From: Macrostomum lignano | Lineage: Eukaryota | Assembly: GCA_002269645.1 (NCBI GenBank) | Contig: NIVC01000910.1 | Location: forward strand, 6,630 to 70,629 | Length of the DNA stretch: 64,000 bases | Direction of reading: 5' to 3' | Shown: positions 3,701 through 35,336 of the stretch, piece by piece | Layout of the letters: each line of letters opens with the position of its first letter | How positions within the stretch are numbered: the stretch's first letter is position 1 | Notes under the pieces: generated by a model | What the model was told of the DNA's origin: nothing | Databases searched by the model: none | What the model saw: the letters and a program-made list of their open reading frames with translations, nothing else | Translations under genes and position numbers: made by a program

Positions 3701-3974
3701 TACTCTGGCCCGAAGTCATGCGCTAAGTTGTCAATCTAGCCCTTGACGGCTTGAAGTAAAAATTTTGCCGACGTCTAAGTTAATGAACAAACAAACTGAA
3801 ACAAGCAAGGATCTATAATGACACTTACCTTCTGCGTTGACTCGAAAATAGACGCCTAAGTAGAAAGTGTAGAAAAAGTGAGAGTTGAATTAGAAAATTA
3901 GAAAGAAGTAAGAAAATTATTTAGTAAGAGAGTGTAGGAAGGAAACTGAGTTTCAGTTGCAAGTGTTTAGAGTT

Positions 3975-4620
3975 TAGACTGGAGACTGCAGACTGTTTAG
4001 GGGGGGTGGTGCCCGGGGTGAGTTGGTTCTCTGGACTGCAGTGTGGCTAGGTCGGGACTGAGCCCCCCGGTCGTACCCGCCCTGCAGGAAAGAAAATGAC
4101 CAATTCACAAAGGTGTACGGTAGACCCAGTAGCATGCCAGCCCTGAGGCTGAGCACCCGGGCTGCAGGTCGGCAAGCTGCCTGCTTTAGGGCTATGGTGC
4201 TCCTCCTTTCTGCCATTCTTTTTTTCTGGGCTGGCATCCCAGCGCTGTTTTATCCCTTTAGCTTTGTGCCTTTGTGGCTTTTATTATTTTAATCTTTTAT
4301 CTGGCCACTAGAAGCCTTCCAATATTCGGAGTTATGAGCTCTGCCCTTGCCCGGTCCATCTTGCCCTGTCCTCGGGTCCATCTCCTGGCTCCTGCTGAAG
4401 GTCCCTGCTTGCGTGTCTCTGGCTCTCATCCTGACAGTGGATTGGTGTCCTGGGAAGGATGTTCGTCCCGAACCGGGGACAACCGGCTGAGTCCGGAGTC
4501 CTCTTGCCCCGGGTGCCTCTTCTCCCGACCCCTTGGCCTGGCCCCCAATAATGAGCTGGATAGGCGATGCCCTTGGGTTGGTAGCAATAGAGGTGTATCC
4601 TAGTCCGCCTAGAGTCTCCC
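3975..4620 (-). mobile_element. Possible highly degenerate 3' part of an RNase H-bearing non-LTR retrotransposon
   Basis: Broken minus-strand frames give YWGPG..GV (RNase H W.PGH.GV-like), KQRWDASP..NGR and IGHFL..R.G..SPD, in the order expected for I/R1-type ORF2 C-termini. No RT motif seen. Confidence 0.3.
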
Positions 4621-5325
4621 CCTCGGATACAAGCCTTCCAGACTCACTCCAAAATAGAGCTGGGTAGTGAAAAGCCTTGAGGCTCGAGCCCTACAGTTGT
4701 CCAGTGCTGTTTAGGATCGCTCTTGGTAATTAGCTGCCCAGACTCGCTCCAATAGTTTAAGCCATTTCCGTAGGTTTAGGAGTAACTCCTCACTCGGACC
4801 GCTTTTTTCAGTAATATTTCAAGCATTTCGCTTTCCAATTTTTCTGCGCACTCCCGAGGACTCGCTAGCTGGGGGGTGGCCTGGGTGGACTCGGTCCTAG
4901 CACCGTCCCTGATTCCACTGTTTGGGTTGGCGGTGTCTTGTACCGTAGGTTTGGGTCAACTCGCCCACCCGCGCTTTGAGCCGGGTCCAATCCCAATGCA
5001 TTCCATGGGGTATCTCGGGCCCTGGACAGTTAATGCCTTGGCCCCTGGTAGTGCCCCTCAGCGGCAGAGCCCACCCAGGGCTGATCCGCGGGTAGCCAAG
5101 CTTCCCACCCCCGTTCAACAACAACAGACTGCAGAGTTAGAGTTCGACGAGCTTTCCAACCGGTTCAAATCGGTTTATACTGGACAGATTGCTTTGTCTG
5201 CTTTCTGGGAATTTTCCACTCCCCATTTTCCATTACTGTTGTTTACGGAAAGTGGGGGAAAGAAACTCCGTGCACTTAGAGGACAAGTGAGTTCGCATCT
5301 CCTCATCCAATGGCAGCTCGCTATT

Positions 5326-11300: not shown

Positions 11301-11390
11301 CATACTGCGCGAGAACACACTGCCCTTCCATGGGGGCGCTGTATTTGGGAGTGCTGTCTTTGGGTGGCGCTTGATCTCGCCACACTGATC
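5326..11390. repeat. Tandem satellite: ~10 units of ~575-625 bp, each a ~490-bp unique body plus a variable (AGAAT)n tract
   Basis: Near-identical bodies: the 114-aa ORF starts at 5798, 6423, 7023, 7608, 8198, 8823, 9433, 10043, 10633 and 11208. Spacings differ only by multiples of 5. The last unit is truncated near 11388. Confidence 0.98.
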
Positions 11391-11686
11391 CATTGGCACT
11401 GGAGTTATCGCAGCTATTCTTAACAAAATAACTCAGGTTGAAAGAGATCTTGCAGAGTGGATCGCGAATAATATATATTTGCTACTTTTCCTCTGCAGTG
11501 CTTGAGGCTCTAGCTTAATCAGCTTTCCAGATATTCAATGGCGGAGATTCCGAAAAATTCTAATGTATTCAAATGGGGGAATTCGGGAAAATCAATCAGG
11601 AATTGCCAAGCTGTAGTAATAAACTCAGATTTGAGATTCTACAGATCATTAGAGCGTGCCAGTCGGTGTCTTCCGCAGAATGAAGG

Positions 11687-11930
11687 TTCTTGGGTCAGGA
11701 TAGGAGATTCTTGGGTGAGGCTATTCTTGGGTCAGCATGGAAGATTATTGGGTCAGGATAGGAGATTCTTGGGTGAGGCTATTCTTGGGTCAGCATGGAA
11801 GATTATTGGGTCAGGATAGGAGATTCTTGGGTGAGGCTATTCTTGGGTCAGCATGGAAGATTCTTGGGTCAGGATAGGAGATTCTTGGGTGAGGCTATTC
11901 TTGGGTCAGCATGGAAGATTCTTGGGTACT
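11687..11930 (+). repeat. 58-bp minisatellite, about 4 copies
   Basis: ttcttgggtcaggataggagattcttgggtgaggctattcttgggtcagcatggaaga repeated. Confidence 0.9.
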
Positions 11931-12858
11931 GACACTTCGATGACATGTTTTATCAGTTTGAAGAATACCTTGCACGGCTTTAGACTCAGTTTTCGAGCTG
12001 GTATCTAAGCACAGTCTCATTCAAGCTGTAGTTAAGCCAGTATTATCTTCACTTCAGCAGCGCATACAACTTATCCGATTTCAGTGGCGTCCTGGTTCAT
12101 TTTGCCCCTACTGAGCGGTGGAATCTCCATTGCCCTGTTCTACTTTATCCAGGTCTTCATCCTTATACTAAGGTGATTATGTAAAGCTTTAAAAATGTTT
12201 ACTTTTAATTTGTGATTGTGTGCACAAGCGCGCACTAGCAGAGGCGCACACTGGCAGAGGCGCGCACCGGCACAAGAGCGCAGCAGCACAAGAGCGCACT
12301 GGCAGAGGCGCGCACTTTTGACACGCTGTAGCATAAGCGCGCTGTCTGTCTGTCTGTCTGTCAGACGGCATGTCTGAGAGAAACCCTACAAACTGAAACA
12401 CACAGGGAAGGCAGAAACAAGTATTTGCAGAATGCGAGTAAAAACAGACGCCAGCCTATAAATTGGTCCATAAAATATTTCTTTATATTGTTTGTCACAG
12501 ATAAGACGCCCAAGCTAATTACAAAAAAACAGCCGCAAAAAAGATTAAGCTGAAAATTGTCTGCCCAACCAAATTTAAAAACTGTTAAAAGACCAACAAT
12601 TAAAGTAATAAAGTTGAAGAGAAAAAATACAATAGTAGGCACTATCTACTGCTATAGGTAAAATTAAACGAGGCACTGATAAGAAAACGATAAAAAATAT
12701 TTTACGAGCGTACTACCAAAGCGAGAGAAAAGTGAGGGATGGAAAAATAACAGATAAAATTGAAAAAGTCCATAAACAGACCGACACCGCAGATAATAGT
12801 TAAACAGCTACAACTAGCTACTTAAGGACAGTAGTGCAAGCGCATGCTAGTGCAGTTT

Positions 12859-14352
12859 TTAAATAATCGACGAATTCAGCCGGAAATTCGGCTCCGAGTT
12901 CAGCTGCTGGTAACCAGACAGTGTGGCGTCGAATTCGCCCTCGTAATCTTCGTCATCGTTATCCACTTTGACATCAAGATCGAGGTCGTCCTCGGATTTC
13001 GGATCGGCGGAGGCCTGCAGGTTAGGGGTGGCGACCGAGTTTTTGAAAGGCCATTTGAGGACAGGGAGATGATGATAAATGAGGTCATTCAAGGATGAGG
13101 AAATATATGCCATGAAAGGTCGATATTTAGGGACACGGACAGGGGTCATGTAGGACAAGACAAGGGGTTATTTAGGGACATGAGTATTGGTCATTTAAGG
13201 TCACAAACATCATGACGGTATCACATGTTTAGTTGCACGCATATAAAGTGGTGAGTCATACATTAACATGGGTTGATAAAATTTCCCAGCTCACCGATCG
13301 ATTATAGCCTAGCCGGGAGTCGGTCTCGCCGTCTCGACTATCGTCGTTGCCCCCAGCCAGCGATGCGGCTAAACAAGCGGCCACATCGAAGGCGGTTGTA
13401 GCGGCAGCAGCGTTAGCAGCAGTCCTACTACCCATAGTATTGCTGCCTAACACAGCAGCGCCGGTAGTATTCGCCAGTGGCAAATAAATTTTTCTAGCCA
13501 CCACCGTCTGCTTCTGCTGCTGCTGCTGGCTGTCAGAGCCGGTCGCTCCCGATGCCGGGTATCGCCGACGGCCGGAACGGGCGCGCAGCTGCGGCTCCCC
13601 TGCACTCAGGCGTCTCTGCGCGAGAGATAAGAATAGGAAAGGGGTCAAATGAGGACAATAATTCTAAGCAGAGGTCATTTCAGGACAAAAATCAACCCTG
13701 GGGTCAGTTGAGGACAAAAGTCTACCCAGGGGTCATTTGAGGACAGAATCTATCTGGAGGTCATTTGAGGACAAACTAATATACGTAAAGATCATTTGAG
13801 GGCAAACATCTACCGTGGGGTCATTGAAGACAGAGGTTATTTGGGGCAAAAAAAGTGCGCAGGGGTCAACTGTCCTTACCTGGCCAACAGTTGTGACGGC
13901 GGCGGCGGAGGCGGCGCACCACCCCGTCGGAACAAGGCGGCAGCGTCAGCGCCTTTGACAGTCGCCGATTGGCCCGCCTGGGTCGGCCGCCGAGATCGCC
14001 AAGACTGGGCGACATGGACGACGCCTGCTCCGTCGAAGACTGCTGCGGCAGAGTTGTTGTTAAAGAGTCGGTGGCCATCGACGCGGCAGCGGCGACGGCG
14101 GCTGCGGCCGTGGCGTCGAGTAGAGGCTGGTCCAAGACAACGGCTGCCGACAGCTGCTGGCGAGAGCAGACGGCTCGACTCGAAGGCTCTGCTGGCAGGC
14201 GCGGCAACAGCGGCGCCGAATGATGAAGCGCAGTTTAGCCGAACGATCGCGCTCCGCAAGGACCTGCAATTGCAGCTGCATGCGAAGATTGGTCAGGTCC
14301 ATCTGGAGGTCGTCCACACGATGCAGGCGTTTCTCGTAGTGCTGCCGAATCT
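12859..14352 (-). CDS. 3' exons of an unidentified host gene (coiled-coil segment, then low-complexity and acidic tail): 14352-13880 (with apparent indels), 13615-13295, 13014-12859
   Basis: Canonical AG/GT sites. The last two exons are phase 0 and open to a TAA at 12859. Peptides IRQHYEKRLHRVDDLQMDL and DDLDLDVKVDNDDEDYEGEF. The introns are gaggac/ggggtca minisatellites. Confidence 0.65.
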
Positions 14353-14705
14353 CTGGGGCGAAAGAAATGACAAGAGACTGTTAGGCGGCAAACAAGGACA
14401 CAGGACTTCTAGAGGTTAAAGGACACAAAAGGTCTCTTAGAGGTCGAATGAGAACACAGAACTATAAGGGTAAAATGAGGACACAGGACTGTTAGGGGTC
14501 AAATGAGGACACGGGACTGTTGAGGGTCAATTGAGGACACGGAGCTGTTATGGGTCAAACTAGGACACGCGGGGACTGTTGTTGTGATAAGTTTTTGCAT
14601 CATGTAGCAAACAGACCATGGCACATTTGCACTAATGCACCATATCTAGACCAGCAGTATCTGAAATAGAAGCAAAAGCCATTTATAAGATAATATACAT
14701 GTAGG

Positions 14706-14997
14706 TCAGTGAAGCAAATATCTAAAATTGTTAACAGAAGTATAAAAGAAAAATGAACAAGAAAAAATGGTGCTCAGTTAGCCGATTCTAAAAGTGAATC
14801 GTGGATCCCCTGAGCCACGAAGAGGCCGAACACCGTTCAGGGGGTTAATCCATAGTTCACTTTGCAGAGCAAAACAAATTCCACAGCACAGTAAACAGTG
14901 CACAGCGGTCTTTTGCAGCATTGAACTAAGGATCAATCCCGCCACTAAGAGCGGGAAGCCACAGCAAGAAATGCAAAGCGGCCAGCTTTTTGAAAGC
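14706..14997. repeat. 292-bp direct repeat, copy 1 (copy 2 at 18684-18975)
   Basis: tcagtgaagcaaatatc...gctttttgaaagc appears identical and of equal length at both positions. Confidence 0.97.
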
Positions 14998-15065
14998 CGA
15001 TAAAATCTTATAGCGAACTCCCCATGCAACGGGGGCTGATGGTTTCAGAGAATAAACTTAGCCTT

Positions 15066-17027
15066 TCAGTCTTTAAGCCACGGATGCAGTCGAAGCACAT
15101 CCGAGCGCCTTTCTCCATAATCGTAGAGTAGCTCCTCGCCTCGAGCAATGTCTCGAATGGCTTGGAAGACCAGATGCGGTTTATTGTTTACATCAGCAAC
15201 AATCGGCTTCAAGTTATTTCTTCGCCGGCTATGGTTAATGTACCGACCGACGTACTGGAAAGTGTTGGTTGCGTCGATGCAATAAGCTTGATCTCGCCAG
15301 GAAAAGAAAAACAAGAAGCAGCATGGCTTCCCTTGCTTTACAATATCTTCCTCCCGGGCGAGGCGTGCTTTTTGTCCTTGGATTAATTCTCCACCGTAAG
15401 TACAGACGACAGTGCCTTTTGGGAGGTCCGTACGGGCAAATGCCCCCAGACCCTCTGCGTCGACGCTACCGGCCTGAACCACGACGTTGCCGGTAGAAAT
15501 CATTGTCTGTCGAACCACATCGGCCATAGTGAGTTGCCTCATAGACGCCATTTCGGTCGGCAGGGATCGCTCTGGACTCCCACGGCTAGCTCGGCCGTGA
15601 GGCGTCACGTGAAGGAGCGGCGTGCATGCTCCGTCCGGAGTTGTGATAGTGTCCGGGACTAGACGCTCGCGATTAGCTGCCATTGCAGGAGGGGCAACCG
15701 CAGCAGCGTGGCTATTTGAGTCCTCAGGCGAAGTCACAGTCGGCTCGAAAGGCGGATCATTGGACAGGCCATCTTTATTGGCTTCTCCTCTTTGGAGCCG
15801 AACGCTAAGGGGAACCTGACAGTGAAGAAAATGAAGAGGACAAATGATTCATAGTGGTAACGGCATACAAATGCAGATTAACCCCAACGCTTTAATCTTT
15901 GCATTGAATAAACATGCAACAAAATTGTTCCTAAGAACACTGTTTCACACAATAAACTGTGGACTTCATTTAGTTTGACCAACTTACTTCATTGGAGGTC
16001 GCCGGTACAGCGTCGGTAGATAAGGCGACGTCTATAGTTGCAGCAGCGGCAGACTCCGGGACCAGAAGCTCGCGATTAGCTGCCATTGCAGGAGGGGCAA
16101 CCGCAGCAGCGTGGCTATTTGAGTCCTCAGGCGAAGTCACAGTCGGCTCGAAAGGCGGATCATTGGACAGGCCATCTTTATTGGCTTCTCCTCTTTGGAG
16201 CCGAACGCTAAGGGGAACCTGACAGTGAAGAAAAAAGTACATCATAATGGTTACAACATGCAATTAAAGATGAACGTAACCCTTTGTTATTTTCATTAAA
16301 CATACATGCAACCCAGCTGATGGTAAGATAATTGCTCTACACCATAAACCATGGGCCAGCATAAAAGACCCCACCCCTTGTTGTTAATCCCTAATATTTC
16401 CTTTTGAGCAAAGTATCTAAAAGCTTTTATTTATTCATTTTTCACTTTCATCTTCTCAAATTTACCAAACATTCAACTTTTTAAGAAAAGTTGCGACCTG
16501 ACCTGACCCGCGACCTGATGCTTTCAAGGTTACAGGCCGCAGCGTTTTAACAACAAAAAACCATGGACACAAATTTTAGTTTAACACACCTCATTGGAGG
16601 TCGCCATTTCAGCGTCGGTAGCTAAGTCCGCGTCCATTGTTATAGCGGCGGCAGATTCCGGCAGGCTTTCAAGCGGCAAGGCTGGATTAAGATTTAGTTG
16701 AGGCCGGATGCCGTAAAAGGCCAACAACCGCAGGCCCTCAATTCTGTCATATGCCCTTGCCCTCGCATCAGCTACGGCTGCACGGCCGACAACAAATGCT
16801 TCGCCGAAATGGCACAGCCGCATGTGTTGTCTCATATTAGAGGCGGCAAATGAGCTGCACAGCTGGCAAAGCTTTAAATCTCTTTTGCCATGCCAACGTT
16901 TGTAGAGAATGTAGGCTTCGACTCGATCGTAGTTTGCTGTATGCTTGCTTCGAGCGTGTCGAAGGAGGGTGGCGGACCGATTGGTGGAATAGTCACACAT
17001 CGGGCAAATAAACTGGTCAGGGTCCAT
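15066..17027 (-). CDS. C2H2 zinc-finger + SET8/PR-Set7 (KMT5A)-like lysine methyltransferase, ~472 aa: exons 17027-16590, 16218-15988, 15815-15066
   Basis: SET motifs EGLGAFA, YGGELI, YCIDAT, GRYINHS and RDIARGEELLYDYG..HPWL closely follow SETD8. N-terminal CPMC..H..KH and CQLC..H..CH fingers. Three phase-0 exons with GT-AG introns and no stops. Confidence 0.88.
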
Positions 17028-17389
17028 ATTGAATTGATTCAAGTTTTCAACGTAAACGTTTAGAGTAAAATTTAGTTCTCGATAAAACGTGTCGCGCAAA
17101 CTTTCTGAAAATGAGGAAAAATCAAAATGAAACCTTTAACTACGGTGAAAGATGAATGAACTAGGCATCTTGGTAATAGGTACTTTACAATGCACTCTTA
17201 AAGACTGTCAGACTGAAAGCAAAGAAGGCATGTTCCGCTCGCTCGTAGTCTCAGGACAATAATAAAAGGCAGCTGAACAGATCAAATCAAATGTTTATTT
17301 GAAAGGTTGGGCGATACAACGGACTTGATAACGCATTACAGTCCCGAATTTCTGCATAGTAGCATTAGGTTGCCAGTCACACTGAAGTT

Positions 17390-17978
17390 TTAAAGCAAAT
17401 CGAGTAGTGAAACGGAATTCGAAATTGTAGGATTTGCATTTTGTTGCAACGAAACGCTGGGAGAAGCTGGATTAAAAAAGCCATTGAAATCATTGTCTAA
17501 CGTAGTTACACTACAACTGTGGCAGGGGCATGTACAATGGCTATCAGGGCAATTGAAAATGTTTGAACGTAAAACACTTGGACCGGAGAGCTGTGAATCG
17601 GCACACTTTTCGGAGGGGTTCCTGGCGGCTAGTGATTGCAGCTTAGAAATTAAAACTTCAGCGTTTTCTTTAGCCTCGTCTAAGTTATAGGTAGATTGCG
17701 AATTTCCATGTCTTAGATTGCTTTCCATGTTTTACCCTAACATGGCTTGGTAAATTCGAAGTGATAACACTGCAAACAGGACACTGATAGAGGTAACCCG
17801 ATTCGGTTCGCTTCTTTGCCTTTAAAAGTCCAAAAAGGCGGATTGTGGCATCAATTTGCTCTTCAGTGGCATCAGGGTGCTTTCGATTGCAATGTACCTT
17901 GAAACCAGATGCGCGTCCTGTCCAAGCATTGCAGATCAAACAGGAAATCTGCGTATGAACCTGCACCATGTGAGACAT
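17390..17978 (-). CDS. Second two-finger C2H2 protein (one apparent frameshift near 17730), with Cys-rich patch CPDSHCTCPCHSC
   Basis: CLIC..HCNRKH and CPVC..SHVRVKH fingers with similar spacing to those of the SET gene. Overlapping ORFs 17685-17999 and 17390-17728. Confidence 0.6.
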
Positions 17979-18683
17979 TGTCCCGCGGGTGACATTCAAG
18001 AGCTGCGGGAAAACGTTGTGGGCTTATTATTATACTGCTTCCAGGGAGGTTAGGCAAATTAAGTCTTAATTTTTGTATTCTAAGACAATGACGGAGAGGA
18101 AATGCTTTAGAGTATAAAAAATTCTGAATCTCACATCTGAATCTCCTATCCTCTGATCGGAACCAGGTCTATCTTCCAACATGAACATCCTTTCCTCTCA
18201 ACTGAAACCCTCGAGTCCGAGTCAATAAGGCTACAGGCCAAGCAGGGTGCCATTAGTTAGTGTGGGCAGTTACATTTTCAATCTCCCCAGCCAAGCCTAA
18301 AGTGCTGCTATAAATGGGATAATGAGTGCATGGCGGGATGGGTCACTGCTATTGCTTATGGTTAACACGTAACAAAAGTAAAAGACAAAAATGTGTATAT
18401 CACGATTACTAGTTCCACTTTTATTATACTTTCGCGCTATCTTTGAAGCAGTATGCAAATATACTATTGGCATAGCGGGCGTCTAAACGCAGGCTAACAT
18501 AAGAGAACTGACAAATTGCAGTGAGTGTCAAAGTGTAGTACAACGAAAAGGGACAAAAGTAAGACGCATATGCGCCTCTCGCTGCAACGACAGGCGACTG
18601 CATATAAATGCATGAAATATTAAGTAATACAAACGAGAGAATAAAACACATTCAAGAAAGTTGCTCGTAGTTATAAATTTCAA

Positions 18684-18975
18684 TCAGTGAAGCAAATATC
18701 TAAAATTGTTAACAGAAGTATAAAAGAAAAATGAACAAGAAAAAATGGTGCTCAGTTAGCCGATTCTAAAAGTGAATCGTGGATCCCCTGAGCCACGAAG
18801 AGGCCGAACACCGTTCAGGGGGTTAATCCATAGTTCACTTTGCAGAGCAAAACAAATTCCACAGCACAGTAAACAGTGCACAGCGGTCTTTTGCAGCATT
18901 GAACTAAGGATCAATCCCGCCACTAAGAGCGGGAAGCCACAGCAAGAAATGCAAAGCGGCCAGCTTTTTGAAAGC
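18684..18975. repeat. 292-bp direct repeat, copy 2
   Basis: Matches 14706-14997. Begins at a splice-acceptor-like site on the minus strand (gtaagcagtatttcag). Confidence 0.97.
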
Positions 18976-19080
18976 TGAAATACTGCTTACTTTGGTAGGC
19001 TGTAAACTTTACAGTAAATTTCTAAGAGAAATCGGTATACGTTTATAAACTGGTTTAGAATTTCATGTAAACAAGCTAGT

Positions 19081-21925
19081 TTACATCCGAAATATGATTA
19101 TCCTATGGATAACAGTTTCAAGTAATCGAGTTTCGGAATTAAATACTATCAATCCATTCTTCATCTGACTCAGACTGCTCACGACTTGATTCAACGTCTG
19201 AATGACTCGGGCTTCAACGTCATCTGGCTGATTTACGTTGGTACCAGCGTCGTTTGGATGCTGCGCATCAGCAGCAGCAGCTTCAATGCTTGCGTCAATG
19301 TGATCAAAGCGAAGAGCTTGAAGTTGCTTTAAAATAGTCTGAAAGAGGCATCGAAACTGGGCTGGCAATCCAGGTTGATGATGGAGTGTTTTCACAGTGC
19401 TGTTCAAGTTTAATTTGAACGTCACGCCACTCTTGCACAATAATGATTTTTCCTCCGCTAGACGATTCAGCTTGTGATACAAGTCAACCCGTCGCTTGAA
19501 CCTCTCAGACACATCGATCGAAAGACCGAAGTAGAAGTCTGACTGGAAGTCGCGAAGCTGAATCATAGTGGGCACGCGAAGGCCTGGCGGAAGCGAGCGG
19601 GCGGCCATTCGAATGTCTGCATTTAAAGCCGCAACCTTGCGTAGACATGCTCGATTTTCTTTTTGTCCATCTGAGCAGCCACTCTGACGGATCCAATAGA
19701 ATCGTTCCAAAGCAAGTGCCTTAAGCTTTGCGTAAGGTTCCCTGCTCAATGGAGAGTCGCTATTGGGATTTATGGCTTCTGCATGCCATTGTTGAGCAAG
19801 ATTTAAAATGGCTACCTCAGAGATTCCGGCAGGAATAGTTAATTTGTTGTTCCGCATCAAATCGCCAGCTTGTAGAAGCAATTGCTCCATTTCAGCTGAA
19901 CAAGACGCGGCTGTGCGAGTTATTAGTTTTAATCGAGCAGAAAACCAATTGGAGGCGTACAACAACTGATTAGCATTGAAGCAATGCAAAATGTAAGACA
20001 TACAAGCACTTCTGCGATCGGACCGCATGTACTTTAAGCTTTTACCAAACGGTCGTAGTGCAGACCAAGCGCGCTCCGTATTCTCCCCGTCGCAAAGACC
20101 CGCTCCAGGAGTTACCCGCACGGAGTACTTTAGTTGGCATTGTCTCTCGTGGCCCAGCACATGAAAGGCGTTCACAGCGCACGTGACACTGTTAAGCTGT
20201 ACACCAGATGCTGACACCATGGACTTGACACGATTGGAAATGCGACAACCTGATTTTAGGAAAAAGTTTTTAAATGAATAAATAATTGAGCTTCGTGTCG
20301 CAGTACGCATGCACGTACATAAGTAAGCACAAGCATAAGTAAGCACACACTATAAGTGTATAGTGTAAATAAGTGCAGCATGATAGAAACACGATAAAAA
20401 TCAACTCACCAACATCATAGATAAAAATGAGATCCTTTGAGACGGGCTGTGTCATTAGGTAATGACGAAGAGTCTGTTCTGGATAGCACAGGCCCTCACC
20501 AGCTGTAATAATGTTGCAACCTGTCAGAAGCCTGTTATGCCGGCAAAATAAGCCAAAGAAACCGTTGACATCGTGCTTGCTGGCCCTGATCACGGGTTTT
20601 TCTGTTCCAGCCTTCCAGTTAGTGCAGCCTTCTGCAGACACTTGTGTCGTAGGAGGCGGTACAGTTGCTGGTTCTACATGAATAAGCGGTGACGGCAATG
20701 AGCGTTCAGAATCTGGCACTAGACGTTGCTTCGAACCCATACTTTGTAGTCTTCGCCATCCAAATAGAGCATCAGCACAAACTACAGACTTCCGACTTGA
20801 ATTTTGGTCAGGACACAAAAGACAACTAGCAGGCCAGCTTGCTGAACACCTCTGCAACTCTCGAAACCGCAGTAGGACTCCATTACGCTGCAATCTCTGA
20901 TACACTCGATCGGCTAAACCAGGGTTCCAGCGACCTTGTCCTACGACGGAGCCTTTGAAAAGACAGGTAATTGCACGAGACAGTGGCAGTTGACCGTCAA
21001 AGCACAAGGAGTCAAGAGTTGATAGAAAGCTAATTGAAAAAAATGTTAACAATTCGCCAACGCGTGACTCGCTTCCAGGAAAGTATCCTTTTGCTAGCAT
21101 GGCATCAACTTTATCACAGGATTGGCACGTATAAATTCTGGCGCAAACAATTCCGTTGATGTCAATAATCTGAATTTCGGATGATGTTGTAAACTCAGAA
21201 GACAAGCTTGATTCGCTACAGCAGAATAGAGAGACAGGCTCTTCTTCTTGAATGTCTTCAAACATTAGCGATTGAGCCTAGGAAAAAGGGTTAAATTTTG
21301 TATGCGGTGTTATAAAAATATTATTCCGTACTAAGGCTATTAGCATTCTAAATACTTTTGTTTCACGTCAAATTTAATACAGCGTTATACTGCCAAATAG
21401 GCGTCATTGTTTTCTTCACAGTAAACTAATATCCTTAGAAATTGCAATTTAGATTTTAAAACAACTTACATTCCACTGGAGGAACTTGTGAGCAGCAAAA
21501 TTTCCATGCGTTATCTTTTTACAATCACTGCAGACATCGTACTGACAATGAACGCATCGGAAAACTCCAGGCTGCATGTCGCAACGAACACAGCATTTTA
21601 ACTCGAATGACTGTTTATAACCGGCAGTGTAACTTTCCACAATGGCCGTGTAGTCTTCCCATTCCGTGAATTTAGGCGGCTGTTCAAACTTATTACTAAT
21701 CTGTTCAGGCATAGAGTCATGGTTTCCTGCACCCAGATCTTGTGAAAGACTGCCGCCAGTGACTGTGGAACACGAGGAAGCCGTGGCAATCGATGTAGTA
21801 CTTTCCAATGCATTAGGCGCATTAGACGTTCGCAATATCCTTGGCCTTCCGCGTTGGCCAGTCATCAGTACTACTTCAGATTGTCTTTTTCTCGATTTCG
21901 CATTTAGTTTTCTTGACGAAATCAT
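19081..21925 (-). CDS. KDZ (Kyakuja-Dileera-Zisupton) transposase with N-terminal CxC cysteine clusters, ~830 aa: exons 21925-21470, 21277-20410, 20249-19081
   Basis: KDZ motifs CLLCP, ADALF, CRH, AGEG, YDVGC (spliced), AFHVLGHERQCQ and GLCDGENTERAWS. Cys clusters CVRC..CVHC..CSDC..H..H and TCQSC..GYFP. Intron phases 0 and 1 are consistent and there are no stops. Confidence 0.92.
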
Positions 21926-24763
21926 TGCTGAAATTCGTGAGGATCATTCTGAATTGTATATTACATCATATGCTAAGCTCAAAAGGTGTTTATCTATATC
22001 AGTGTCTTTTTAGAGCAGGTGCTTAGCCATCTGCTCAGCCACCTGCAAGGCAACCTGCTCAGGCATTGCAGCTCAGGCAGTGGCTGGCTTGGAGCATCAG
22101 CTGATTTGATTAAAGTTGATTAAAATCTAGCAGATTTATAGTCTATAATTTGTTATCCATAGCCATATTGCATTGAGTTGTGTTTATAAGTATATAATAA
22201 GCAGCTTAAATTATTATTTGGTGTAATTGGGATGCTTTGGAATATGTTTTCTAAATTTTCCACTTCATCTTGTATTCTTGATTGTTGTATTTTCTTACAA
22301 GTCTTTTCTGGGTCCTTATGTCTATGAAAAAGGGTAGGCCTACCTGCATATAGTGGCTCTTTGATTTTAATTTATAAATTTTAGATGTATACATTTTTTG
22401 TTTTAATAGTTGCAGTTTAATGAGCCACAACACAAATGCCCACAAAGTTTTTATCAGTTTTATTTTATTTGGAATATTCCAATAAATTATAATATATAAA
22501 TATATATTATTTATCCTAACAAAAAGAATTCTATATGAATATTATATTTACATATTTATAGTCACAGAATCATGCACTGAAAAAGTTCTTCTTAGGCTTG
22601 ATAACAATATAGAAACATATAGAAACTAATAGATAAAAGTCTTAAATAACATTTATCATTTTTGATATTCTGTTTTTTAATTTGACTAAGAACATCTAAA
22701 GAAATCATACTTTTTTATTAGAATATTTAAACTTATTTAAAGGCAACAAAGGTACAAAAGAATAGGCAGCCTTATGGTCATAACATTATGGTTTTAACTT
22801 TTTTCTGTCAATTCACTAACTTTGAATTACCAATAGATTAAAAATTTAATAGATTATATGGCCATTAATGTTTATATCTAATTATGCAAATACTATAATT
22901 TTATCTATAGTTTGTTTCAATCTTCCAAAGCTTTTTATTTGTTTTCAAAAGGTACACAAAGTTAATGATGTCTTTTGCTTAAAAAAATGTCCAATTTTTT
23001 ATAAAAATAGCTTTTTGCCAACTGATATTATACTAATCCAACATTTTACCATTCATTTTTGGCATTTGTTATTTGTCCAATGACTGGACAAATAGCCTTT
23101 TTGCTATTTGTCTGCTTAAATTGCTAACACAAGTATCTGTTTGTTTTATGATGAATATTCTAAATTTTTAAGACCTTTTCTTGTATATTAATTAATATTT
23201 TCTTATATACTGTTAGCAAAGCAATGTATTCAATTTGGCATAATTTTGTATATAAGACACACTAGTATAACAACATAATAAACTAATAATCAAGATACAA
23301 ATAAGAAGTCTTTAAAGTCTAGGAATATTTATCCTTGTAGTTTCTATGAAATAGATTTTTTAGCATTATTAATTTAATTGGACAAATAACAAAATGTCTA
23401 TTTGTCCAGTATTAACTAGATGAATAAGAAAGCATGGTCATAATCCAGTAACTGGACAAATGACAATTGCCTTTATTTTTAGATTGTATGCTAGTATAGG
23501 CTTATATTATACATAAAGAACATTTGGCAGAAAAATTAGCTAGCAAGGCAATGGTGAGCAAAATATTGACTTTTTACTATTTTCCAAATATGTCTATCTT
23601 ATCTGGCTGGAATGAGCCACCTGACATAGGCCCTACTCACTATATATTCCACTCTTGACTCCAAGGTGCATATAGGAAAAAGATTATTTAAGTGTAAGGT
23701 GTGCAATGAAAAATACAATGTGGGACTGTAGCCTAAGAGCAATGCTGTTACCTAGCTATTTAAGAAGTAGTACTTCAACCAACCTGCTGTCTAGCAACAA
23801 ATGAGATCTACTGTCACTGACATATGACAAGCATATCTAAGATGCTTAAAGTTTAAAAAAATTCTTAATACTCTGGTCACAGTTGCTGTGTCACTGTCAC
23901 AGATTCATCAGTTAATTCATCACAAATAAGCCCTCAAATCTCTAGAAGGTATTCATTTGAAGTAGCCAGGATCACCATATTATTTTTTGTTATTGGCCCT
24001 TGCTCTATGCACTGCCTACAAACTTGAAGGTCTATATTATATTATTACACAATCTAAATATACTAAATCTCTAAGGTTTGTTTGTATGCTTGAATGAATG
24101 TCCATAATGCTCTAGTTGTATAACTAAATTCATGCAAATATATATCTAGATTTGAAAGGCCTTCTCGTCTCAATTTCAGCACAAAAAGTGCCAGGAATCA
24201 GGTCGACAGGTCATTCGCAAGTCAGTTTCATCACATACTACTATTGTATCAATATTTACACAAACTACACGTCACAATTTACACAATGATGTATGACAAA
24301 AAATTACATATATTACAAACTACACGTCACAATTTACACAAATATTTACACAATAATTAATATATTACAAAAAAGCTATGCGATTAGCGAATACGTGGCT
24401 ACACACACATCAGCCATAGCTTTTATGATAGCTAGAAGAAAAAATTATTGCCGATGTAACGCATCAGCTATGGTAAACAAAGAAACACTAGGAGAACTAA
24501 TGACGCAGCGCGAGAAAAATCTGTTTTAGATTTGCGGCTGTTAGTTTGTTCACATAAGATAGGCATATTAAGTGTTTTAGTAAAATAAAATGCAAATACA
24601 ATAAATAAACGTATTTTTTTCTCCCAAAACAGAACCCACCGATCGCATCAGTTTTTTTTATCAATAAATTATTACATTTGTTATACTACAGATAAATTTC
24701 CGGTGGTCTAAGCCAAGTGTAATAACTAGCGCAACGATCCCTAAATCATCGCTTGTGACGCTT

Positions 24764-26460
24764 GGAACCCCAAATCAACTCAAGAAGGCCCAAACCAGCC
24801 CTAGGAAGCTCAAACTAGCCCTGGAAAGCTCAAACTAGCGCTGGAAAGCTCAAATTGGCGCGGGAAAGCTCGAATTGGCGCCGGAAGCTAAATTTGGCGT
24901 CAGGATCCCCAAATTGGCGCCAGGAACCCCAAATCAACTCAAGAAGGCCCAAACCAGCCATAGGAAGCTCAAACTAGCCCTGGAAAGCTCAAACTAGCGC
25001 TGGAAAGCTCAAATTGGCGCGAGAAAGCTCGAATTGGCGCCGGAAGCTAAATTTGGCGCCAGGATCCCCAAATTGGCGCCAGGAACCCCAAATCAACTCA
25101 AGAAGGCCCAAACCAGCCCTAGGAAGCTCAAACTAGCCCTGGAAAGCTCAAACTAGCGCTGGAAAGCTCAAATTGGCGCGGGAAAGCTCGAATTGGCGCC
25201 GGAAGCTAAATTTGGCGCCAGGAACCCCAAATCAACTCAAGAAGGCCCAAACCAGCCCTAGGAAGCTCAAACTAGCCCTGGAAAGCTCAAACTAGCGCTG
25301 GAAAGCTCAAATTGGCGCGGGAAAGCTCGAATTGGCGCCGGAAGCTAAATTTGGCGCCAGGATCCCCAAATTGGCGCCAGGAACCCCAAATCAACTCAAG
25401 AAGGCCCAAACCAGCCCTAGGAAGCTCAAACTAGCCCTGGAAAGCTCAAACTAGCGCTGGAAAGCTCAAATTGGCGCGGGAAAGCTCGAATTGGCGCCGG
25501 AAGCTAAATTTGGCGCCAGGAACCCCAAATCAACTCAAGAAGGCCCAAACCAGCCCTAGGAAGCTCAAACTAGCCCTGGAAAGCTCAAACTAGCGCTGGA
25601 AAGCTCAAATTGGCGCGGGAAAGCTCGAATTGGCGCCGGAAGCTAAATTTGGCGCCAGGATCCCCAAATTGGCGCCAGGAACCCCAAATCAACTCAAGAA
25701 GGCCCAAACCAGCCCTAGGAAGCTCAAACTAGCCCTGGAAAGCTCAAACTAGCGCTGGAAAGCTCAAATTGGCGCGGGAAAGCTCGAATTGGCGCCGGAA
25801 GCTAAATTTGGCGTCAGGATCCCCAAATTGGCGCCAGGAACCCCAAATCAACTCAAGAAGGCCCAAACCAGCCATAGGAAGCTCAAACTAGCCCTGGAAA
25901 GCTCAAACTAGCGCTGGAAAGCTCAAATTGGCGCGAGAAAGCTCGAATTGGCGCCGGAAGCTAAATTTGGCGCCAGGATCCCCAAATTGGCGCCAGGAAC
26001 CCCAAATCAACTCAAGAAGGCCCAAACCAGCCCTAGGAAGCTCAAACTAGCCCTGGAAAGCTCAAACTAGCGCTGGAAAGCTCAAATTGGCGCGGGAAAG
26101 CTCGAATTGGCGCCGGAAGCTAAATTTGGCGCCAGGAACCCCAAATCAACTCAAGAAGGCCCAAACCAGCCCTAGGAAGCTCAAACTAGCCCTGGAAAGC
26201 TCAAACTAGCGCTGGAAAGCTCAAATTGGCGCGGGAAAGCTCGAATTGGCGCCGGAAGCTAAATTTGGCGCCAGGATCCCCAAATTGGCGCCAGGAACCC
26301 CAAATCAACTCAAGAAGGCCCAAACCAGCCCTAGGAAGCTCAAACTAGCCCTGGAAAGCTCAAACTAGCGCTGGAAAGCTCAAATTGGCGCGGGAAAGCT
26401 CGAATTGGCGCCGGAAGCTAAATTTGGCGCCAGGATCCCCAAATTGGCGCCAGGATCGCC
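24764..26460. repeat. Tandem array of 11 units of 159/139 bp, rich in GGCGCC and ggaaagctcaaa subrepeats, with a 914-bp higher-order period
   Basis: Unit starts (ggaacccc) at 24764, 24923, 25082, 25221, 25380, 25519, 25678, 25837, 25996, 26135 and 26294. Diagnostic variants recur 914 bp apart. Confidence 0.95.
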
Positions 26461-26889
26461 GAATCAGCGCTGGAATTTGCCAACGGGCGTAGAAGTGGCA
26501 GCATATATCAGCTTGCTACTTTTTGGCGCCGATTTTAATATACCGGCGCCAATTTCAGCCTTTGGGCGCCCATTTTAGCGCCCTGGCAAGGTCAATGCAT
26601 TTAGTTCTCACGCGATGGCGCCAAAAAATTTTTTTTTCTTTTTTTGAATTAGTGCCATGTATCTTGCCAACCAATACGAGTCAAGTTCTGGCGTCTGCTT
26701 TTCCACAGCCGCCTGGCTGGGTCCCGTCAACAAGCTATTTTTAGCGTGGGAAACTGTCTGACTCACTCATTTGATTCCCCGAGTCCACGGGTGCAAGGGC
26801 TAGCCAAGGTGGACCCACGGTGGAGCCACCTGGCTAGCCACGTATTTTTTGTGTAGTGGATTGTCTGGCTAGCCTGGGAATATGCTCTG

Positions 26890-35335: not shown

Positions 35336-35336
35336 G

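What the first reader, a model, noticed from the sequence alone, without database searches (positions are those of the whole stretch)
15066..21925. KDZ transposon linked to a zinc-finger-targeted SET8-like (H4K20) methyltransferase
Seen in sequence: an intact spliced KDZ transposase is followed on the same strand by a ZnF gene and an intact ZnF-SET gene, and both the transposase and SET genes are followed by the same 292-bp segment. The SET domain keeps the SAM-binding G.G and INHS motifs, and the Tyr of LLYDYG that makes SETD8 a mono-methyltransferase. Established: fungal KDZ elements travel with chromatin/DNA-modifying cargo (TET/JBP), and host SET8 has no C2H2 fingers. Inference: a transposon-encoded, sequence-targeted H4K20me1 writer that could set the chromatin state of the element (anti-silencing, replication licensing) or of its targets.
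Basis: partly seen in the sequence, partly recalled or inferred. Interest (0 to 1): 0.8.

Follow-up and report, generated by a model that had tools for sequence, protein, structure and literature searches.

The report
Flatworm KDZ transposon carrying SET8-like methyltransferase
This is one copy of a long, multi-copy DNA-transposon-like repeat of the flatworm Macrostomum lignano in which a KDZ transposase gene is always followed by, and transcribed together with, a zinc-finger protein carrying a histone-H4K20-type (SET8/KMT5A-like) methyltransferase domain, so a mobile element appears to carry its own chromatin-writing enzyme.

Summary
On the minus strand lie a 3-exon KDZ transposase gene (830 aa), a two-finger ZnF gene, a spliced ZnF-SET gene (472 aa from its ATG), and two 100%-identical 292-bp modules, one after the transposase and one after the SET gene.

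The window is Macrostomum lignano (flatworm), not a fungus. GenBank annotates both genes from RNA data under one transcription-unit prefix (Mlig022522 g1 and g3).

The SET gene is not single-copy host KMT5A. On seven contigs read directly (nine by protein counts) the same KDZ gene is followed by the same SET gene, inside a block of at least 28 kb that is about 99% identical between copies. The copies have different left flanks and private nested insertions.

The SET domain is KMT5A-family and keeps every conserved residue, but it is a divergent outlier (39% to human).

Not supported: sequence targeting (two spaced, non-tandem fingers) and defined termini or target-site duplications. In this copy the ZnF gene is disabled.

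New: each 292-bp module folds as an HDV-like self-cleaving ribozyme (0 of 160 shuffled windows match). SET genes carried by transposons are already known in oomycetes and red algae, so this is a new variant of a known kind.

The parts
19081..21925 (-). KDZ transposase gene, 3 exons (21925-21470, 21277-20410, 20249-19081), 830 aa. It has an N-terminal B-box-like zinc finger and a weak CxC1 match; the KDZ core is residues 317-528.
   Evidence: The splice model is. Pfam KDZ E 4e-34. Identical to GenBank PAA74961.1, BOX15_Mlig022522g1. It was called as an 830-aa gene in L081. A frameshift-like C-terminal segment relative to paralogues is shown.
18684..18975 (-). 292-bp module B, which starts 105 nt downstream of the KDZ stop codon.
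   Evidence: 100% identical to 14706-14997 with unrelated flanks. Present exactly twice in every copy of the element.
18748..18821 (-). HDV-like self-cleaving ribozyme candidate B. The predicted catalytic C is at 18759.
   Evidence: Rfam RF02682, full-length match, 21 bits, E 0.15.
17390..18006 (-). ZnF2 gene, encoding a two-finger protein. It is 205 aa in five other copies. In the window it has lost its start codon and carries a 2-nt deletion, leaving a 97-aa ORF with both fingers.
   Evidence: ORFs are. It is a paralogue of the ZnF part of ZnF-SET (26% identity over 92 aa, E 5e-5).
15066..17104 (-). ZnF-SET gene. Exon 1 is 17104-16590 (first ATG at 17027; two fingers). Exon 2 is 16218-15988 (a duplicated linker, skipped in the annotated window isoform). 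Exon 3 is 15815-15066 (linker plus SET domain). The product is 472 aa from the ATG.
   Evidence: The GenBank proteins are 409 aa (PAA74960.1, Mlig022522g3), 486 aa and 497 aa. The 497-aa model starts right after the acceptor TTTTCAG.
15114..15452 (-). SET catalytic domain of KMT5A/SET8 type, encoded without an intron.
   Evidence: Pfam SET E 3e-20. The best PDB hits are all KMT5A at E 6e-27, then Cryptosporidium SET8 at 5e-17, then EZH2 at 3e-13. All invariant and near-invariant family columns are kept.
14706..14997 (-). 292-bp module A, which starts 68 nt downstream of the SET stop codon.
   Evidence: As RNA it is strongly structured (z = -3.9).
14770..14843 (-). HDV-like ribozyme candidate A. 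P1 is 14843-14837 / 14813-14807. P2 is 14833-14827 / 14776-14770. P3 is 14826-14824 / 14816-14814. L3 (UCUUCGU) is 14823-14817. P4 is 14801-14796 / 14788-14783. J4/2 (GCUAAC) is 14782-14777, with the catalytic C at 14781.
15652..16234 (-). Internal tandem duplication (15652-15831 vs 16055-16234, 99%) that created the alternatively used exon 2.
   Evidence: Isoforms with and without exon 2 are annotated.
12859..13435 (-). Fourth gene of the unit: a small acidic 98-aa protein encoded by 2 exons. It is not annotated in the window copy and has no known domain.
   Evidence: Annotated in other copies. Reconstructed. No Pfam hit.
1..26889 (-). The repeated block shared at about 98-99.8% identity with loci on other contigs. 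It includes satellite arrays on both sides of the genes. Its left edge is at 26889; the right edge lies beyond the window start.

Best explanation
The finding is the coding core of one copy of a long (at least 28 kb), dispersed, multi-copy KDZ element of Macrostomum lignano.

The core is a same-strand, four-gene unit:
- a KDZ transposase;
- a small two-finger protein (ZnF2, disabled in this copy);
- a ZnF-SET protein whose catalytic domain is of the KMT5A/SET8 type;
- a 98-aa acidic protein.

The genes are cut from one assembled transcription unit. The ZnF-SET mRNA begins exactly at a 3' splice acceptor, as expected for a downstream cistron resolved by spliced-leader trans-splicing. The SET gene is therefore an accessory (cargo) gene of the element, not the host KMT5A orthologue.

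I infer that it is an active lysine mono-methyltransferase, most likely on H4K20. The paired fingers, or the free ZnF2 paralogue, may bring it to chromatin or to element DNA. The purpose would be to modify the chromatin or repair state at the element or at transposition intermediates.

The two identical 292-bp modules after the transposase and SET cistrons each contain an HDV-like ribozyme fold. I infer they are RNA-processing modules that cut the long transcript 3' of these two cistrons.

Shown: gene structures, linkage in every copy, the shared transcription-unit prefix, KMT5A-family membership by sequence, and the ribozyme-like fold.

Inferred: mobility as one unit, enzymatic activity and substrate, targeting, trans-splicing, and ribozyme cleavage.
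For: Organism and annotation:
- The ZnF-SET protein is PAA74960.1 (Mlig022522g3) and the KDZ protein is PAA74961.1 (Mlig022522g1) of M. lignano contig NIVC01000910.1.
- In that annotation, a shared prefix marks one transcription-unit cluster at 95% identity. Units were cut into genes at trans-splice and poly(A) sites (PMC5730564).
- The 497-aa model starts directly after TTTTCAG.

Linkage:
- The 90%-identity KDZ cluster has 6 proteins on 9 contigs.
- The SET proteins are likewise on 9 contigs (1+4+3+1).
- Seven contigs were read directly, and all show KDZ, then about 2 kb, then SET, usually followed by the 98-aa gene.
- ZnF-SET is identical in 5 of 6 copies.

Dispersed repeat rather than haplotigs:
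- The block is about 99% identical from window 26889 to beyond position 1.
- The left flanks of the window copy and L082 are unrelated from the same base onward.
- There are private nested insertions, for example 3.3 kb with an ACTAGT target-site duplication in L082.
- Satellite lengths vary between copies.

Not the host orthologue:
- Identity to human KMT5A is 39%, while diverse eukaryotic KMT5A loci are 55-96% identical to human and only 34-50% to the window.
- The SET domain is intronless, whereas animal loci carry an intron there.
- There is no PIP box.
- ZnF plus SET8-like occurs in only 1 of the 146 other nearest representatives.

Catalytic competence:
- Best PDB hits are KMT5A at 6e-27. 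E259, C270, Y245, NHS, Y334, Y336 and HPW are conserved in the alignment.
- All 19 invariant or near-invariant family columns are kept.

Ribozyme:
- Rfam gives a full-length HDV-family match in both modules.
- The minimum-free-energy fold reproduces P1, P3 and P4 (z = -3.9).
- A descriptor requiring P1, P2, P3, P4, a J4/2 C and the L3 consensus hits only these two sites; 0 of 160 shuffled windows have any hit.

Precedent:
- KDZ elements of 10-30 kb carrying accessory genes are known (PMC12477816).
- SET genes are known in HarbingerS, MuDR, Helitron, Plavaka and Zisupton elements (PMC12730594; bioRxiv 10.1101/2025.02.11.637652).
Against: - No terminal inverted repeats were found, and no target-site duplication could be defined.
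- The right end lies outside the window, and the left edge in the window abuts a gypsy LTR that itself lacks a target-site duplication.
- No empty site or insertion polymorphism was available.
- The DV1 assembly is known to contain large redundant duplications (PMC5730564), and all copies sit near contig ends.
- Copies are so similar that no selection test or covariation test is possible.
- The fingers are two spaced units, not a tandem array, and only one passes Pfam's cut-off marginally.
- The ribozyme scores 21 bits against Rfam's gathering score of 44. It has C rather than the usual G at +1, and it lies 157 nt inside the repeated module rather than at its edge.
- The window copy shows decay: ZnF2 is disabled and the KDZ C-terminus has frameshift-like segments.
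Confidence: 0.6

Rival explanations
1. This is a host locus, not a transposon. A domesticated KDZ-derived gene and a divergent KMT5A paralogue sit side by side in a satellite-rich region. That region was amplified by segmental duplication, or by the recent whole-genome and large-chromosome duplications of the DV1 line. The copies are then paralogous or haplotypic blocks rather than transposition products.
For: No terminal inverted repeats or target-site duplications were found. The shared block is very long (at least 28 kb) and full of satellites. [quoted passage not shown] The genes survived the filter that removed transcripts overlapping annotated repeats from the GenBank annotation.
Against: Nine contigs is more than ploidy alone predicts. 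The left flanks of two copies are unrelated from the same nucleotide onward. Other copies break at different points (L086 at 23886, L084 at 3790). Private transposable-element insertions with target-site duplications exist. The repeat libraries used for that filter excluded unclassified families. The KDZ catalytic core is intact in all copies. Giant KDZ elements with internal repeats and cargo genes are documented (PMC12477816).
Confidence: 0.25
2. The SET protein is not an H4K20me1 chromatin writer for the element. It methylates a non-histone substrate (for example the transposase, PCNA or a repair factor) or another lysine. Alternatively it acts non-catalytically, and the fingers mediate protein or RNA contacts rather than DNA targeting.
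For: Identity to KMT5A is only 39% and the branch is long. KMT5A itself has non-histone substrates (established knowledge). The fingers are spaced about 25 aa apart without Krueppel-type linkers. The nearest stand-alone relative (46%) sits on a giant-virus-like contig, showing that this SET type is used in varied contexts.
Against: Residues that contact H4 in SET8 structures (E259, C270 and the HPW tail) and the product-specificity Tyr are conserved. All family-invariant positions are kept.
Confidence: 0.3
3. The 292-bp module is merely a duplicated 3' UTR or terminator, or a small repeat left by the recombination that inserted the ZnF/SET cassette (Campbell-type integration or unequal crossing-over). 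Its ribozyme-like fold is inactive.
For: The Rfam score is below the gathering threshold (21 vs 44 bits). The +1 nucleotide is C. No covariation data exist because all 18 module copies in the nine loci are identical apart from one substitution outside the motif. Direct repeats flanking an inserted cassette are what homologous integration produces.
Against: All four helices, the L3 sequence UCUUCGU (compare HDV UCCUCGC and F. prausnitzii UCUACGU) and the J4/2 sequence GCUAA are present. 0 of 160 shuffled windows contain such a motif, and only 1 of 160 reaches the same summed helix length. The module is unusually structured (z = -3.9). The two readings are not exclusive: a functional processing module can also be the recombination substrate.
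Confidence: 0.35

Closest known systems
DNA transposons carrying SET-domain accessory genes: HarbingerS and MuDR of Phytophthora, Helitrons, and red-algal Plavaka/Zisupton PAG2 (DNA methylase + SET)
   Same: A cut-and-paste transposon family carries a histone-methyltransferase-type SET gene next to its transposase. One precedent involves Zisupton, a KDZ member (PMC12730594; bioRxiv 10.1101/2025.02.11.637652).
   Different: Here the host is an animal. The SET domain is specifically KMT5A/SET8-type and is fused to two C2H2-like fingers, with a free finger paralogue alongside. The genes form one transcription unit, probably trans-spliced. The element ends are not defined here.
Fungal KDZ (Kyakuja/Dileera/Zisupton) elements with TET/JBP dioxygenase cargo
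   Same: A KDZ transposase is linked to an epigenetic-mark enzyme in many copies, with proposed self-regulation of silencing (PMC12730594).
   Different: The cargo is a histone lysine methyltransferase rather than a DNA base oxidase. The host is a flatworm. The Kyakuja signature (7-bp target-site duplication, CA..TG ends) could not be verified; only a 5' CA at the left edge was seen.
Giant KDZ elements of Ectocarpus and Chlamydomonas (10-32 kb)
   Same: Very long KDZ elements with nested transposable elements, internal repeats and extra transcribed genes (PMC12477816).
   Different: No SET cargo is reported there. The full length and ends are unknown here.
KMT5A / SETD8 / PR-Set7 (host H4K20 mono-methyltransferase)
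   Same: The fold family is the same by sequence. The GxG, NHS and ELLYDYG motifs (Phe/Tyr-switch Tyr) and the HPWLK C-terminus are shared. There is no Cys-rich pre- or post-SET region.
   Different: Identity is 39%. There is no PIP degron. The domain is intronless, carries ZnF N-terminal modules, is multi-copy and is always next to KDZ.
SETMAR (Metnase) of primates
   Same: An animal case in which a SET methyltransferase and a DNA transposase are physically coupled, with a link to double-strand-break repair (my own knowledge).
   Different: SETMAR is a single-copy domesticated fusion of a host SET gene with a mariner transposase. Here the two are separate genes in a multi-copy unit, and the SET domain is of another subfamily.
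HDV-like ribozymes of R2/RTE/L1Tc retrotransposons, and ribozyme-bearing direct repeats of retrozymes
   Same: A nested double-pseudoknot motif sits inside a mobile-element transcript (R2 context: PMC3414825). As in retrozymes, two identical direct repeats each carry a ribozyme and flank a segment (my own knowledge).
   Different: In retrotransposons the ribozyme defines the 5' end of the element RNA. Here it lies about 250-330 nt downstream of two protein-coding cistrons of a DNA transposon. The flanked segment (3,978 nt) is protein-coding. Retrozymes use hammerheads. A search for 'HDV-like ribozyme' together with 'DNA transposon' returned only papers on R2 retrotransposons.

Membership tests
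KDZ transposase (Pfam PF18758) | Match to the KDZ catalytic-core profile above the curated cut-off | tested here: met
   118.7 bits against a cut-off of 26.6, covering profile positions 4-212 of 217 on the spliced 830-aa protein.
KDZ DNA transposon (mobile element) | Defined termini (terminal inverted repeats, or CA..TG ends) and 7-8-bp target-site duplications flanking the copies | tested here: inconclusive
   The left edge of the repeat is at 26889 and starts with CAGAGC, with unrelated flanks in two copies. No inverted copy of that end exists in the window or the loci. The right end lies beyond the window. No target-site duplication could be checked.
KDZ DNA transposon (mobile element) | Multiple dispersed, near-identical copies | tested here: met
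   9 contigs carry KDZ proteins at 90% identity or more. The blocks are about 99% identical and have private nested insertions.
KMT5A/SET8 family of SET methyltransferases | Closest to KMT5A among solved structures, over the whole catalytic domain including the C-flanking helix | tested here: met
   The top 14 PDB sequences are all KMT5A (E 6e-27 to 2e-22), covering query residues 88-222 of 223. Next is Cryptosporidium SET8 at 5e-17, then EZH2 at 3e-13.
KMT5A/SET8 family of SET methyltransferases | Catalytic and product-specificity residues: GxG, Y245, NHS, Y334 (switch), Y336 and the HPW tail | tested here: met
   All align identically. The 19 invariant or near-invariant columns across 147 family members are all present.
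KMT5A/SET8 family of SET methyltransferases | H4K20 mono-methylation activity | not testable with these tools
   This needs a biochemical assay.
Host KMT5A orthologue | Single or low copy, orthologue-level conservation, PIP degron, no zinc fingers | tested here: not met
   It is present on 9 contigs and always next to KDZ. Identity to human is 39%, against 55-96% for other eukaryotic KMT5A loci. No PIP-like motif is present. C2H2 fingers are present.
Tandem C2H2 (Krueppel-type) sequence-specific DNA-binding array | Three or more adjacent fingers joined by about 7-aa TGEKP-type linkers | tested here: not met
   There are two fingers (CX2CX12HX4H and CX2CX10HX4H) about 25 aa apart. Only finger 1 reaches a Pfam cut-off, and only marginally.
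HDV-like self-cleaving ribozyme | Nested double pseudoknot (P1, P2, P3, P4) with the L3 U...CG motif and a J4/2 catalytic C | tested here: met
   P1 is 7 bp, P2 is 7 bp (2 of them G-U), P3 is 3 bp and P4 is 6 bp. L3 is UCUUCGU and J4/2 is GCUAAC. 0 of 160 shuffled windows match the descriptor with the L3 consensus.
HDV-like self-cleaving ribozyme | Rfam gathering score for an HDV-type family | tested here: not met
   RF02682 scores 21 bits against a gathering score of 44, with E 0.15 on 601 nt. The model cannot score the P2 pseudoknot.
HDV-like self-cleaving ribozyme | Self-cleavage, and covariation in homologues | not testable with these tools
   All available copies are identical within the motif.
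Spliced-leader trans-spliced polycistronic unit (M. lignano) | Several genes cut from one assembled transcription unit, with the downstream mRNA 5' end at a 3' splice acceptor | tested here: inconclusive
   KDZ is g1 and ZnF-SET is g3 under the shared prefix Mlig022522. In the other copies the prefix is Mlig004599, with KDZ as g2, SET as g4 and the 98-aa gene as g5. The naming rule is in PMC5730564. The 497-aa model starts right after TTTTCAG. Spliced-leader reads themselves were not available.

The most novel reading that the evidence does not exclude
The two identical 292-nt modules are active HDV-like ribozymes used by a DNA transposon. By cutting at both modules they would release a discrete 3,978-nt RNA, carrying the ZnF2 and ZnF-SET cistrons, from the KDZ polycistronic transcript. 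That RNA would have 5'-OH and 2',3'-cyclic-phosphate ends and could be circularised, as retrozyme RNAs are. The module may also have been the homology through which the methyltransferase cassette was captured. This would be the first HDV-like ribozyme system serving a cut-and-paste transposon and its chromatin-modifying cargo.
Probability: 0.2. Interest if true: 0.85.

Novelty: new variant of a known kind. Interest (0 to 1): 0.62.

Why it matters
Transposons that carry enzymes able to rewrite epigenetic marks are rare. The documented cases are mainly in fungi (TET/JBP), plants (VANDAL anti-silencing), oomycetes and red algae (SET).

Here an animal, and an experimentally tractable one (M. lignano has transgenesis), has a young, expressed, multi-copy KDZ element with a KMT5A-type methyltransferase fused to zinc fingers.

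That makes a long-standing question directly testable: can a mobile element set its own chromatin or repair environment through H4K20 methylation? H4K20 methylation is a mark tied to replication licensing, 53BP1-dependent repair and heterochromatin.

If the ribozyme candidates cleave, the locus would also extend HDV-like ribozymes from retrotransposons to DNA-transposon gene expression.

Tried and rejected
- Word-indexed protein searches with the SET ORF and the KDZ ORF returned only distant bacterial SET proteins or nothing, not even the self proteins. They were uninformative. The exhaustive representative search recovered the self protein and hence the organism.
- A scan of viral contigs with KDZ found nothing.
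- A metagenome scan with SET returned 80 SET8-like loci. None was closer than 51%, and none had KDZ or the ZnF module nearby.
- Terminal inverted repeats were sought between the flanks 11.2-15 kb and 21.9-27.7 kb, and with the left-end 23-mer on both strands. None was found.
- LTR-like or SINE-like explanations for the 292-bp module were rejected. It has no TG..CA ends, no target-site duplication, no poly(A) or simple tail, no tRNA-like part and no extra copies in about 100 kb of other M. lignano sequence.
- A right boundary at window 3790, suggested by locus L084, was rejected as the element end. L087 and L088 continue to and beyond window position 1, and L084 does not resume within 4.9 kb.
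- The left boundary might have been just the gypsy insertion site. This could not be confirmed: the gypsy element has no target-site duplication, and sequence beyond it does not match the L082 flank.
- A splice joining ZnF2 to ZnF-SET is in frame but would destroy the second finger, and five copies have an uninterrupted 205-aa ZnF2 ORF. It was rejected.
- Absence of AATAAA or ATTAAA after the KDZ and SET stop codons is not significant for about 500 nt and was not used as evidence.
- The Iyer et al. 2014 KDZ paper could not be read.

Full report
**1. What is in the sequence**

All features are on the minus strand.

The KDZ gene has three exons with canonical GT-AG introns: 21925-21470, 21277-20410 and 20249-19081. 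They encode 830 aa. The spliced protein matches Pfam KDZ over almost the whole profile (E 4e-34, 118.7 bits). It also has a weak CxC1 match and a B-box-like N-terminal finger.

Downstream lies an ORF with two C2H2-like fingers (17999-17685).

Next comes a three-exon ZnF-SET gene. Exon 1 is 17104-16590 with its ATG at 17027. Exon 2 is 16218-15988. Exon 3 is 15815-15066. All junctions are phase-0 GT-AG.

Exon 2 is a tandem duplicate of the start of exon 3 (180 nt at 99%).

14706-14997 and 18684-18975 are 292 bp and 100% identical, with unrelated flanks on both sides. They start 68 nt and 105 nt after the SET and KDZ stop codons.

**2. Organism and independent annotation**

An exhaustive HMMER search of 1.84 billion representatives found a 409-aa protein whose last 223 residues are 100% identical to the SET ORF query. 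It is PAA74960.1, 'BOX15_Mlig022522g3, partial', of the flatworm Macrostomum lignano. It lies on contig NIVC01000910.1 of assembly GCA_002269645.1. Window position x corresponds to record position x + 6629.

My 830-aa KDZ model is exactly PAA74961.1, 'BOX15_Mlig022522g1'.

The gene models of this assembly come from RNA-seq. Assembled 'transcriptional units' were clustered at 95% identity and given a common prefix. They were then cut into genes at experimentally mapped trans-splice and poly(A) sites. About 7% of units are polycistronic precursors (PMC5730564).

So KDZ (g1) and ZnF-SET (g3) belong to one transcription-unit cluster. In other copies the 5'-partial 497-aa ZnF-SET model begins immediately after the acceptor TTTTCAG at 17105/17104. 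That is where a trans-spliced downstream cistron would start.

Both an exon-2-containing isoform (486 or 497 aa) and an exon-2-skipped isoform (409 aa) are annotated.

**3. Is the SET gene linked to KDZ elsewhere?**

Yes.

The KDZ protein belongs to a 90%-identity cluster of six M. lignano proteins on nine contigs. The ZnF-SET proteins are also on nine contigs (1+4+3+1).

I read seven contigs directly: the window, NIVC01001944, NIVC01000191, NIVC01004217, NIVC01002504, NIVC01003192 and NIVC01001892. Each shows a KDZ gene of 759-831 aa, then about 2 kb, then a SET gene on the same strand. In most, a 98-aa gene (84 aa in one) follows about 1.6 kb further on.

Gene numbering in the other cluster (Mlig004599: g2 KDZ, g4 SET, g5 98-aa, then g6, g8 and so on up to g29) fits a four-gene unit repeated about eight times.

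An independent annotation even fuses KDZ and SET into 1347-aa models (UniRef A0A1I8J3S7).

The ZnF-SET protein is identical in five of six copies. Only 12 of 4,503 aligned columns vary across the region from the KDZ stop to module A.

**4. Extent and nature of the repeated unit**

The copies are collinear with the window at 98.6-99.8% identity, from window 26889 down to position 1 and beyond. The unit is therefore at least 28 kb.

Besides the genes it contains:
- a 159-bp-period satellite (24764-26470, but about 7 kb long in L085);
- an AT-rich spacer;
- a roughly 600-bp-period array (5.3-11.2 kb; ten units here, two in L084);
- further simple repeats.

Several things argue for a dispersed repeat rather than haplotigs.
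- The window and L082 are 100% identical up to the same base (26889, sequence CAGAGCATATTCC...). Beyond it their flanks are unrelated.
- L086 and L084 break at other points.
- L082 has a private 3.3-kb insertion flanked by an ACTAGT duplication.
- The window and L087 carry an extra 1.1 kb.
- All copies lie at contig ends, as expected for a long repeat the assembler could not cross.

However, I found no terminal inverted repeats. The right end lies outside the window. In the window the left edge abuts the LTR of a Ty3/gypsy element (26890-36454; LTRs 99.4% identical) that itself lacks a target-site duplication.

Mobility of the whole unit is therefore inferred, not shown. Giant KDZ elements (10-32 kb) with nested transposable elements and transcribed accessory genes are documented in Ectocarpus and Chlamydomonas (PMC12477816).

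**5. The SET domain**

Against all PDB sequences, the 14 best matches are human KMT5A/SETD8 constructs (E 6e-27 to 2e-22). They cover query residues 88-222 of 223. Next come Cryptosporidium SET8 (5e-17) and EZH2 (3e-13).

The alignment conserves:
- the GxG motif;
- Y245;
- R258-E259;
- C270;
- NHS;
- ELLYDYG, whose first Tyr is the Phe/Tyr switch that limits SET8 to mono-methylation (my own knowledge of the 3F9W-3F9Z work);
- the C-terminal HPWLK.

In an alignment of 147 nearest family members, all 4 invariant and 15 near-invariant columns are present in the window protein.

It is not a typical host orthologue. Identity to human KMT5A is 39%. Diverse eukaryotic KMT5A-like loci from metagenomes are 55-96% identical to human but only 34-50% to the window. 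Nothing outside M. lignano exceeds about 50% identity.

The domain is intronless where animal orthologues have an intron. There is no PIP-box-like motif. Among the 146 other nearest representatives, only one other protein has a C2H2 hit.

I conclude that it is a KMT5A-family enzyme, probably active. H4K20me1 is the most likely product, but this is unproven.

**6. The zinc fingers**

ZnF-SET carries CX2CX12HX4H and, about 25 aa later, CX2CX10HX4H. The separate ZnF2 protein has the same two-finger layout and is a paralogue (26% identity over 92 aa, E 5e-5).

This is not a tandem Krueppel-type array, so 'sequence-targeted' is not supported by the anatomy. DNA, RNA or protein binding all remain possible.

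In the five other copies compared (L082-L086), ZnF2 is a 205-aa ORF. In the window its ATG is CAG and a 2-nt deletion shifts the frame.

The window's KDZ also differs from the majority. It has a frameshift-like 19-residue segment, and an alternative C-terminal tail shared with two other copies.

This copy therefore looks slightly decayed, unless these are PacBio indel errors. The ATG-to-CAG change is a substitution and is less likely to be such an error.

**7. The 292-bp modules**

Rfam gives a full-length but sub-threshold match to an HDV-family ribozyme in both modules. The family is RF02682, the score is 21 bits (gathering 44), and E is 0.15 on 601 nt.

Read as an HDV-like fold, the 74 nt from 14843 to 14770 give:
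- P1: CCCCUGA / UCAGGGG;
- P2: GUGUUCG / UGAGCAC (a pseudoknot the covariance model cannot score);
- P3: GCC / GGC;
- L3: UCUUCGU;
- P4: CGAUUC / GAAUCG;
- J4/2: GCUAAC, with the putative catalytic C at 14781.

The minimum-free-energy fold of the module reproduces P1, P3 and P4, and the module is unusually stable (z = -3.9).

I wrote my own descriptor. It is loose on helix lengths and allows G-U pairs. It finds 1.7 sites per dinucleotide-shuffled window. Sites as strong as this one occur in 2 of 120 shuffles. When the L3 consensus U[CU]N2-4CGN is required, 0 of 160 shuffles contain any site, while the real window has exactly these two.

Weak points remain. There is a C at +1. No covariation is available, because the 18 module copies in the nine loci are identical apart from one substitution outside the motif. 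The motif starts 157 nt inside the module.

I consider it a good candidate, about 60% likely to cleave.

Two identical direct repeats flanking a 3.7-kb cassette are also what homologous (Campbell-type) capture of the ZnF/SET cassette would leave.

**8. Comparison with known systems and novelty**

Epigenetic-enzyme cargo in KDZ elements is established for fungal TET/JBP.

SET-domain accessory genes are already described in HarbingerS and MuDR of Phytophthora (PMC12730594). They are also described in Helitrons and in the red-algal PAG2 gene (DNA methylase + SET), which is associated with Plavaka and, in Bangiophyceae, with Zisupton (bioRxiv 10.1101/2025.02.11.637652).

The kind is therefore known. 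The following are new here:
- an animal host;
- a KMT5A-type SET domain;
- its fusion to a two-finger module that also exists as a separate gene;
- expression from one transcription unit, likely trans-spliced;
- the candidate HDV-like ribozymes.

I found no paper linking HDV-like ribozymes to DNA transposons or to Macrostomum.

**9. Verdict**

Linkage and co-expression of KDZ and a SET8-like gene are strongly supported, and the 'single-copy host KMT5A' alternative is rejected. Transposition of the unit, DNA-sequence targeting and H4K20me1 or anti-silencing function remain inferences.

The finding is a new variant of a known kind, of moderate to high interest, in a tractable animal model.

Noticed in passing
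window 14770-14843 (-) and 18748-18821 (-): Each 292-bp module contains an HDV-like self-cleaving ribozyme candidate. It has all four helices, L3 UCUUCGU and J4/2 GCUAAC, and a T6 run follows directly after it. It is below Rfam's gathering score but absent from 160 shuffled windows.
   Followed up: yes
window 17390-18006 (-): The stand-alone ZnF gene is disabled in this copy: its ATG is changed to CAG at 18006-18004 and there is a 2-nt deletion at 17709/17710. Five other genomic copies have an intact 205-aa ORF. It is not annotated in GenBank at any copy.
   Followed up: yes
window 19081-19500 (-), KDZ residues about 710-830: The window's KDZ protein has a 19-residue frameshift-like segment (SLLCKSGVTFKLNLNSTVK where five paralogues have IIIVQEWRDVQIKLEQHCE). 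Across the copies there are two alternative C-terminal tails. These could be decay or PacBio indel errors.
   Followed up: partly
window 12859-13435 (-): A two-exon gene for a 98-aa acidic, low-complexity protein is annotated in the other copies as part of the same transcription-unit cluster (Mlig004599 g5/g28). It is present but unannotated in the window. It has no Pfam domain.
   Followed up: partly
window 26890-36454 (-): A Ty3/gypsy LTR retrotransposon with gag, RT-RNase H and integrase ORFs. Its 308-310-bp LTRs are 99.4% identical. It is G+C-rich (56-62%) relative to its surroundings. It has no target-site duplication, and it abuts the left edge of the KDZ block exactly.
   Followed up: partly
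window 24764-26470 and 5332-11241: Satellite arrays lie inside the repeated block: a 159-bp period (built of 20-bp subunits) and a roughly 600-bp period containing (GAATA)n. Copy number differs strongly between element copies (about 1.7 kb vs about 7 kb; ten units vs two).
   Followed up: partly
window 14500-14590: Three tandem units of about 28 nt (..AGGACACGG.GCTGTT..) lie just downstream of module A. They might be protein-binding sites but were not examined further.
   Followed up: no
window 55303-57947 (+): An ORF has protein-primed DNA polymerase B (PF03175) and endonuclease VII matches, and is followed by a 400-aa ORF. This looks like a Polinton/Maverick-like or related element fragment.
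   Followed up: no
L082 5330-8659 (insertion site = window 23261-23266): A private 3.3-kb insertion in one other copy of the block is flanked by a 6-bp ACTAGT duplication. The window and L087 carry another extra 1.1 kb at window 3996-5124.
   Followed up: partly
L090 (Logan SRR33465455 contig, 51 kb), gene at 10001-10417: The most similar stand-alone SET protein outside M. lignano (P0019, 138 aa, 46%) lies on a gene-dense contig of small ORFs that also encodes Evr1/Alr sulfhydryl oxidase and a HARE-HTH protein. The contig looks like a giant-virus genome fragment.
   Followed up: partly
proteins P0017, P0018, P0088: SET8-like domains occur in multi-copy or odd contexts in other animals and in metagenome data. 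There are 5 stretches in a 4152-aa seadragon protein and 8 tandem fragments in a sea-cucumber 'set-1' model. A 1230-aa metagenome protein has a Cys-rich N-terminal region and a 47%-identical C-terminal SET. One of the 147 nearest relatives carries a Ulp1 peptidase domain. Together these hint at other transposon-associated SET8-like genes.
   Followed up: partly
window 21926-21945 (-): A 3' splice-acceptor-like sequence (AATTTCAG) ends 2 nt before the KDZ start codon. It could be a spliced-leader trans-splice site for the first cistron.
   Followed up: no
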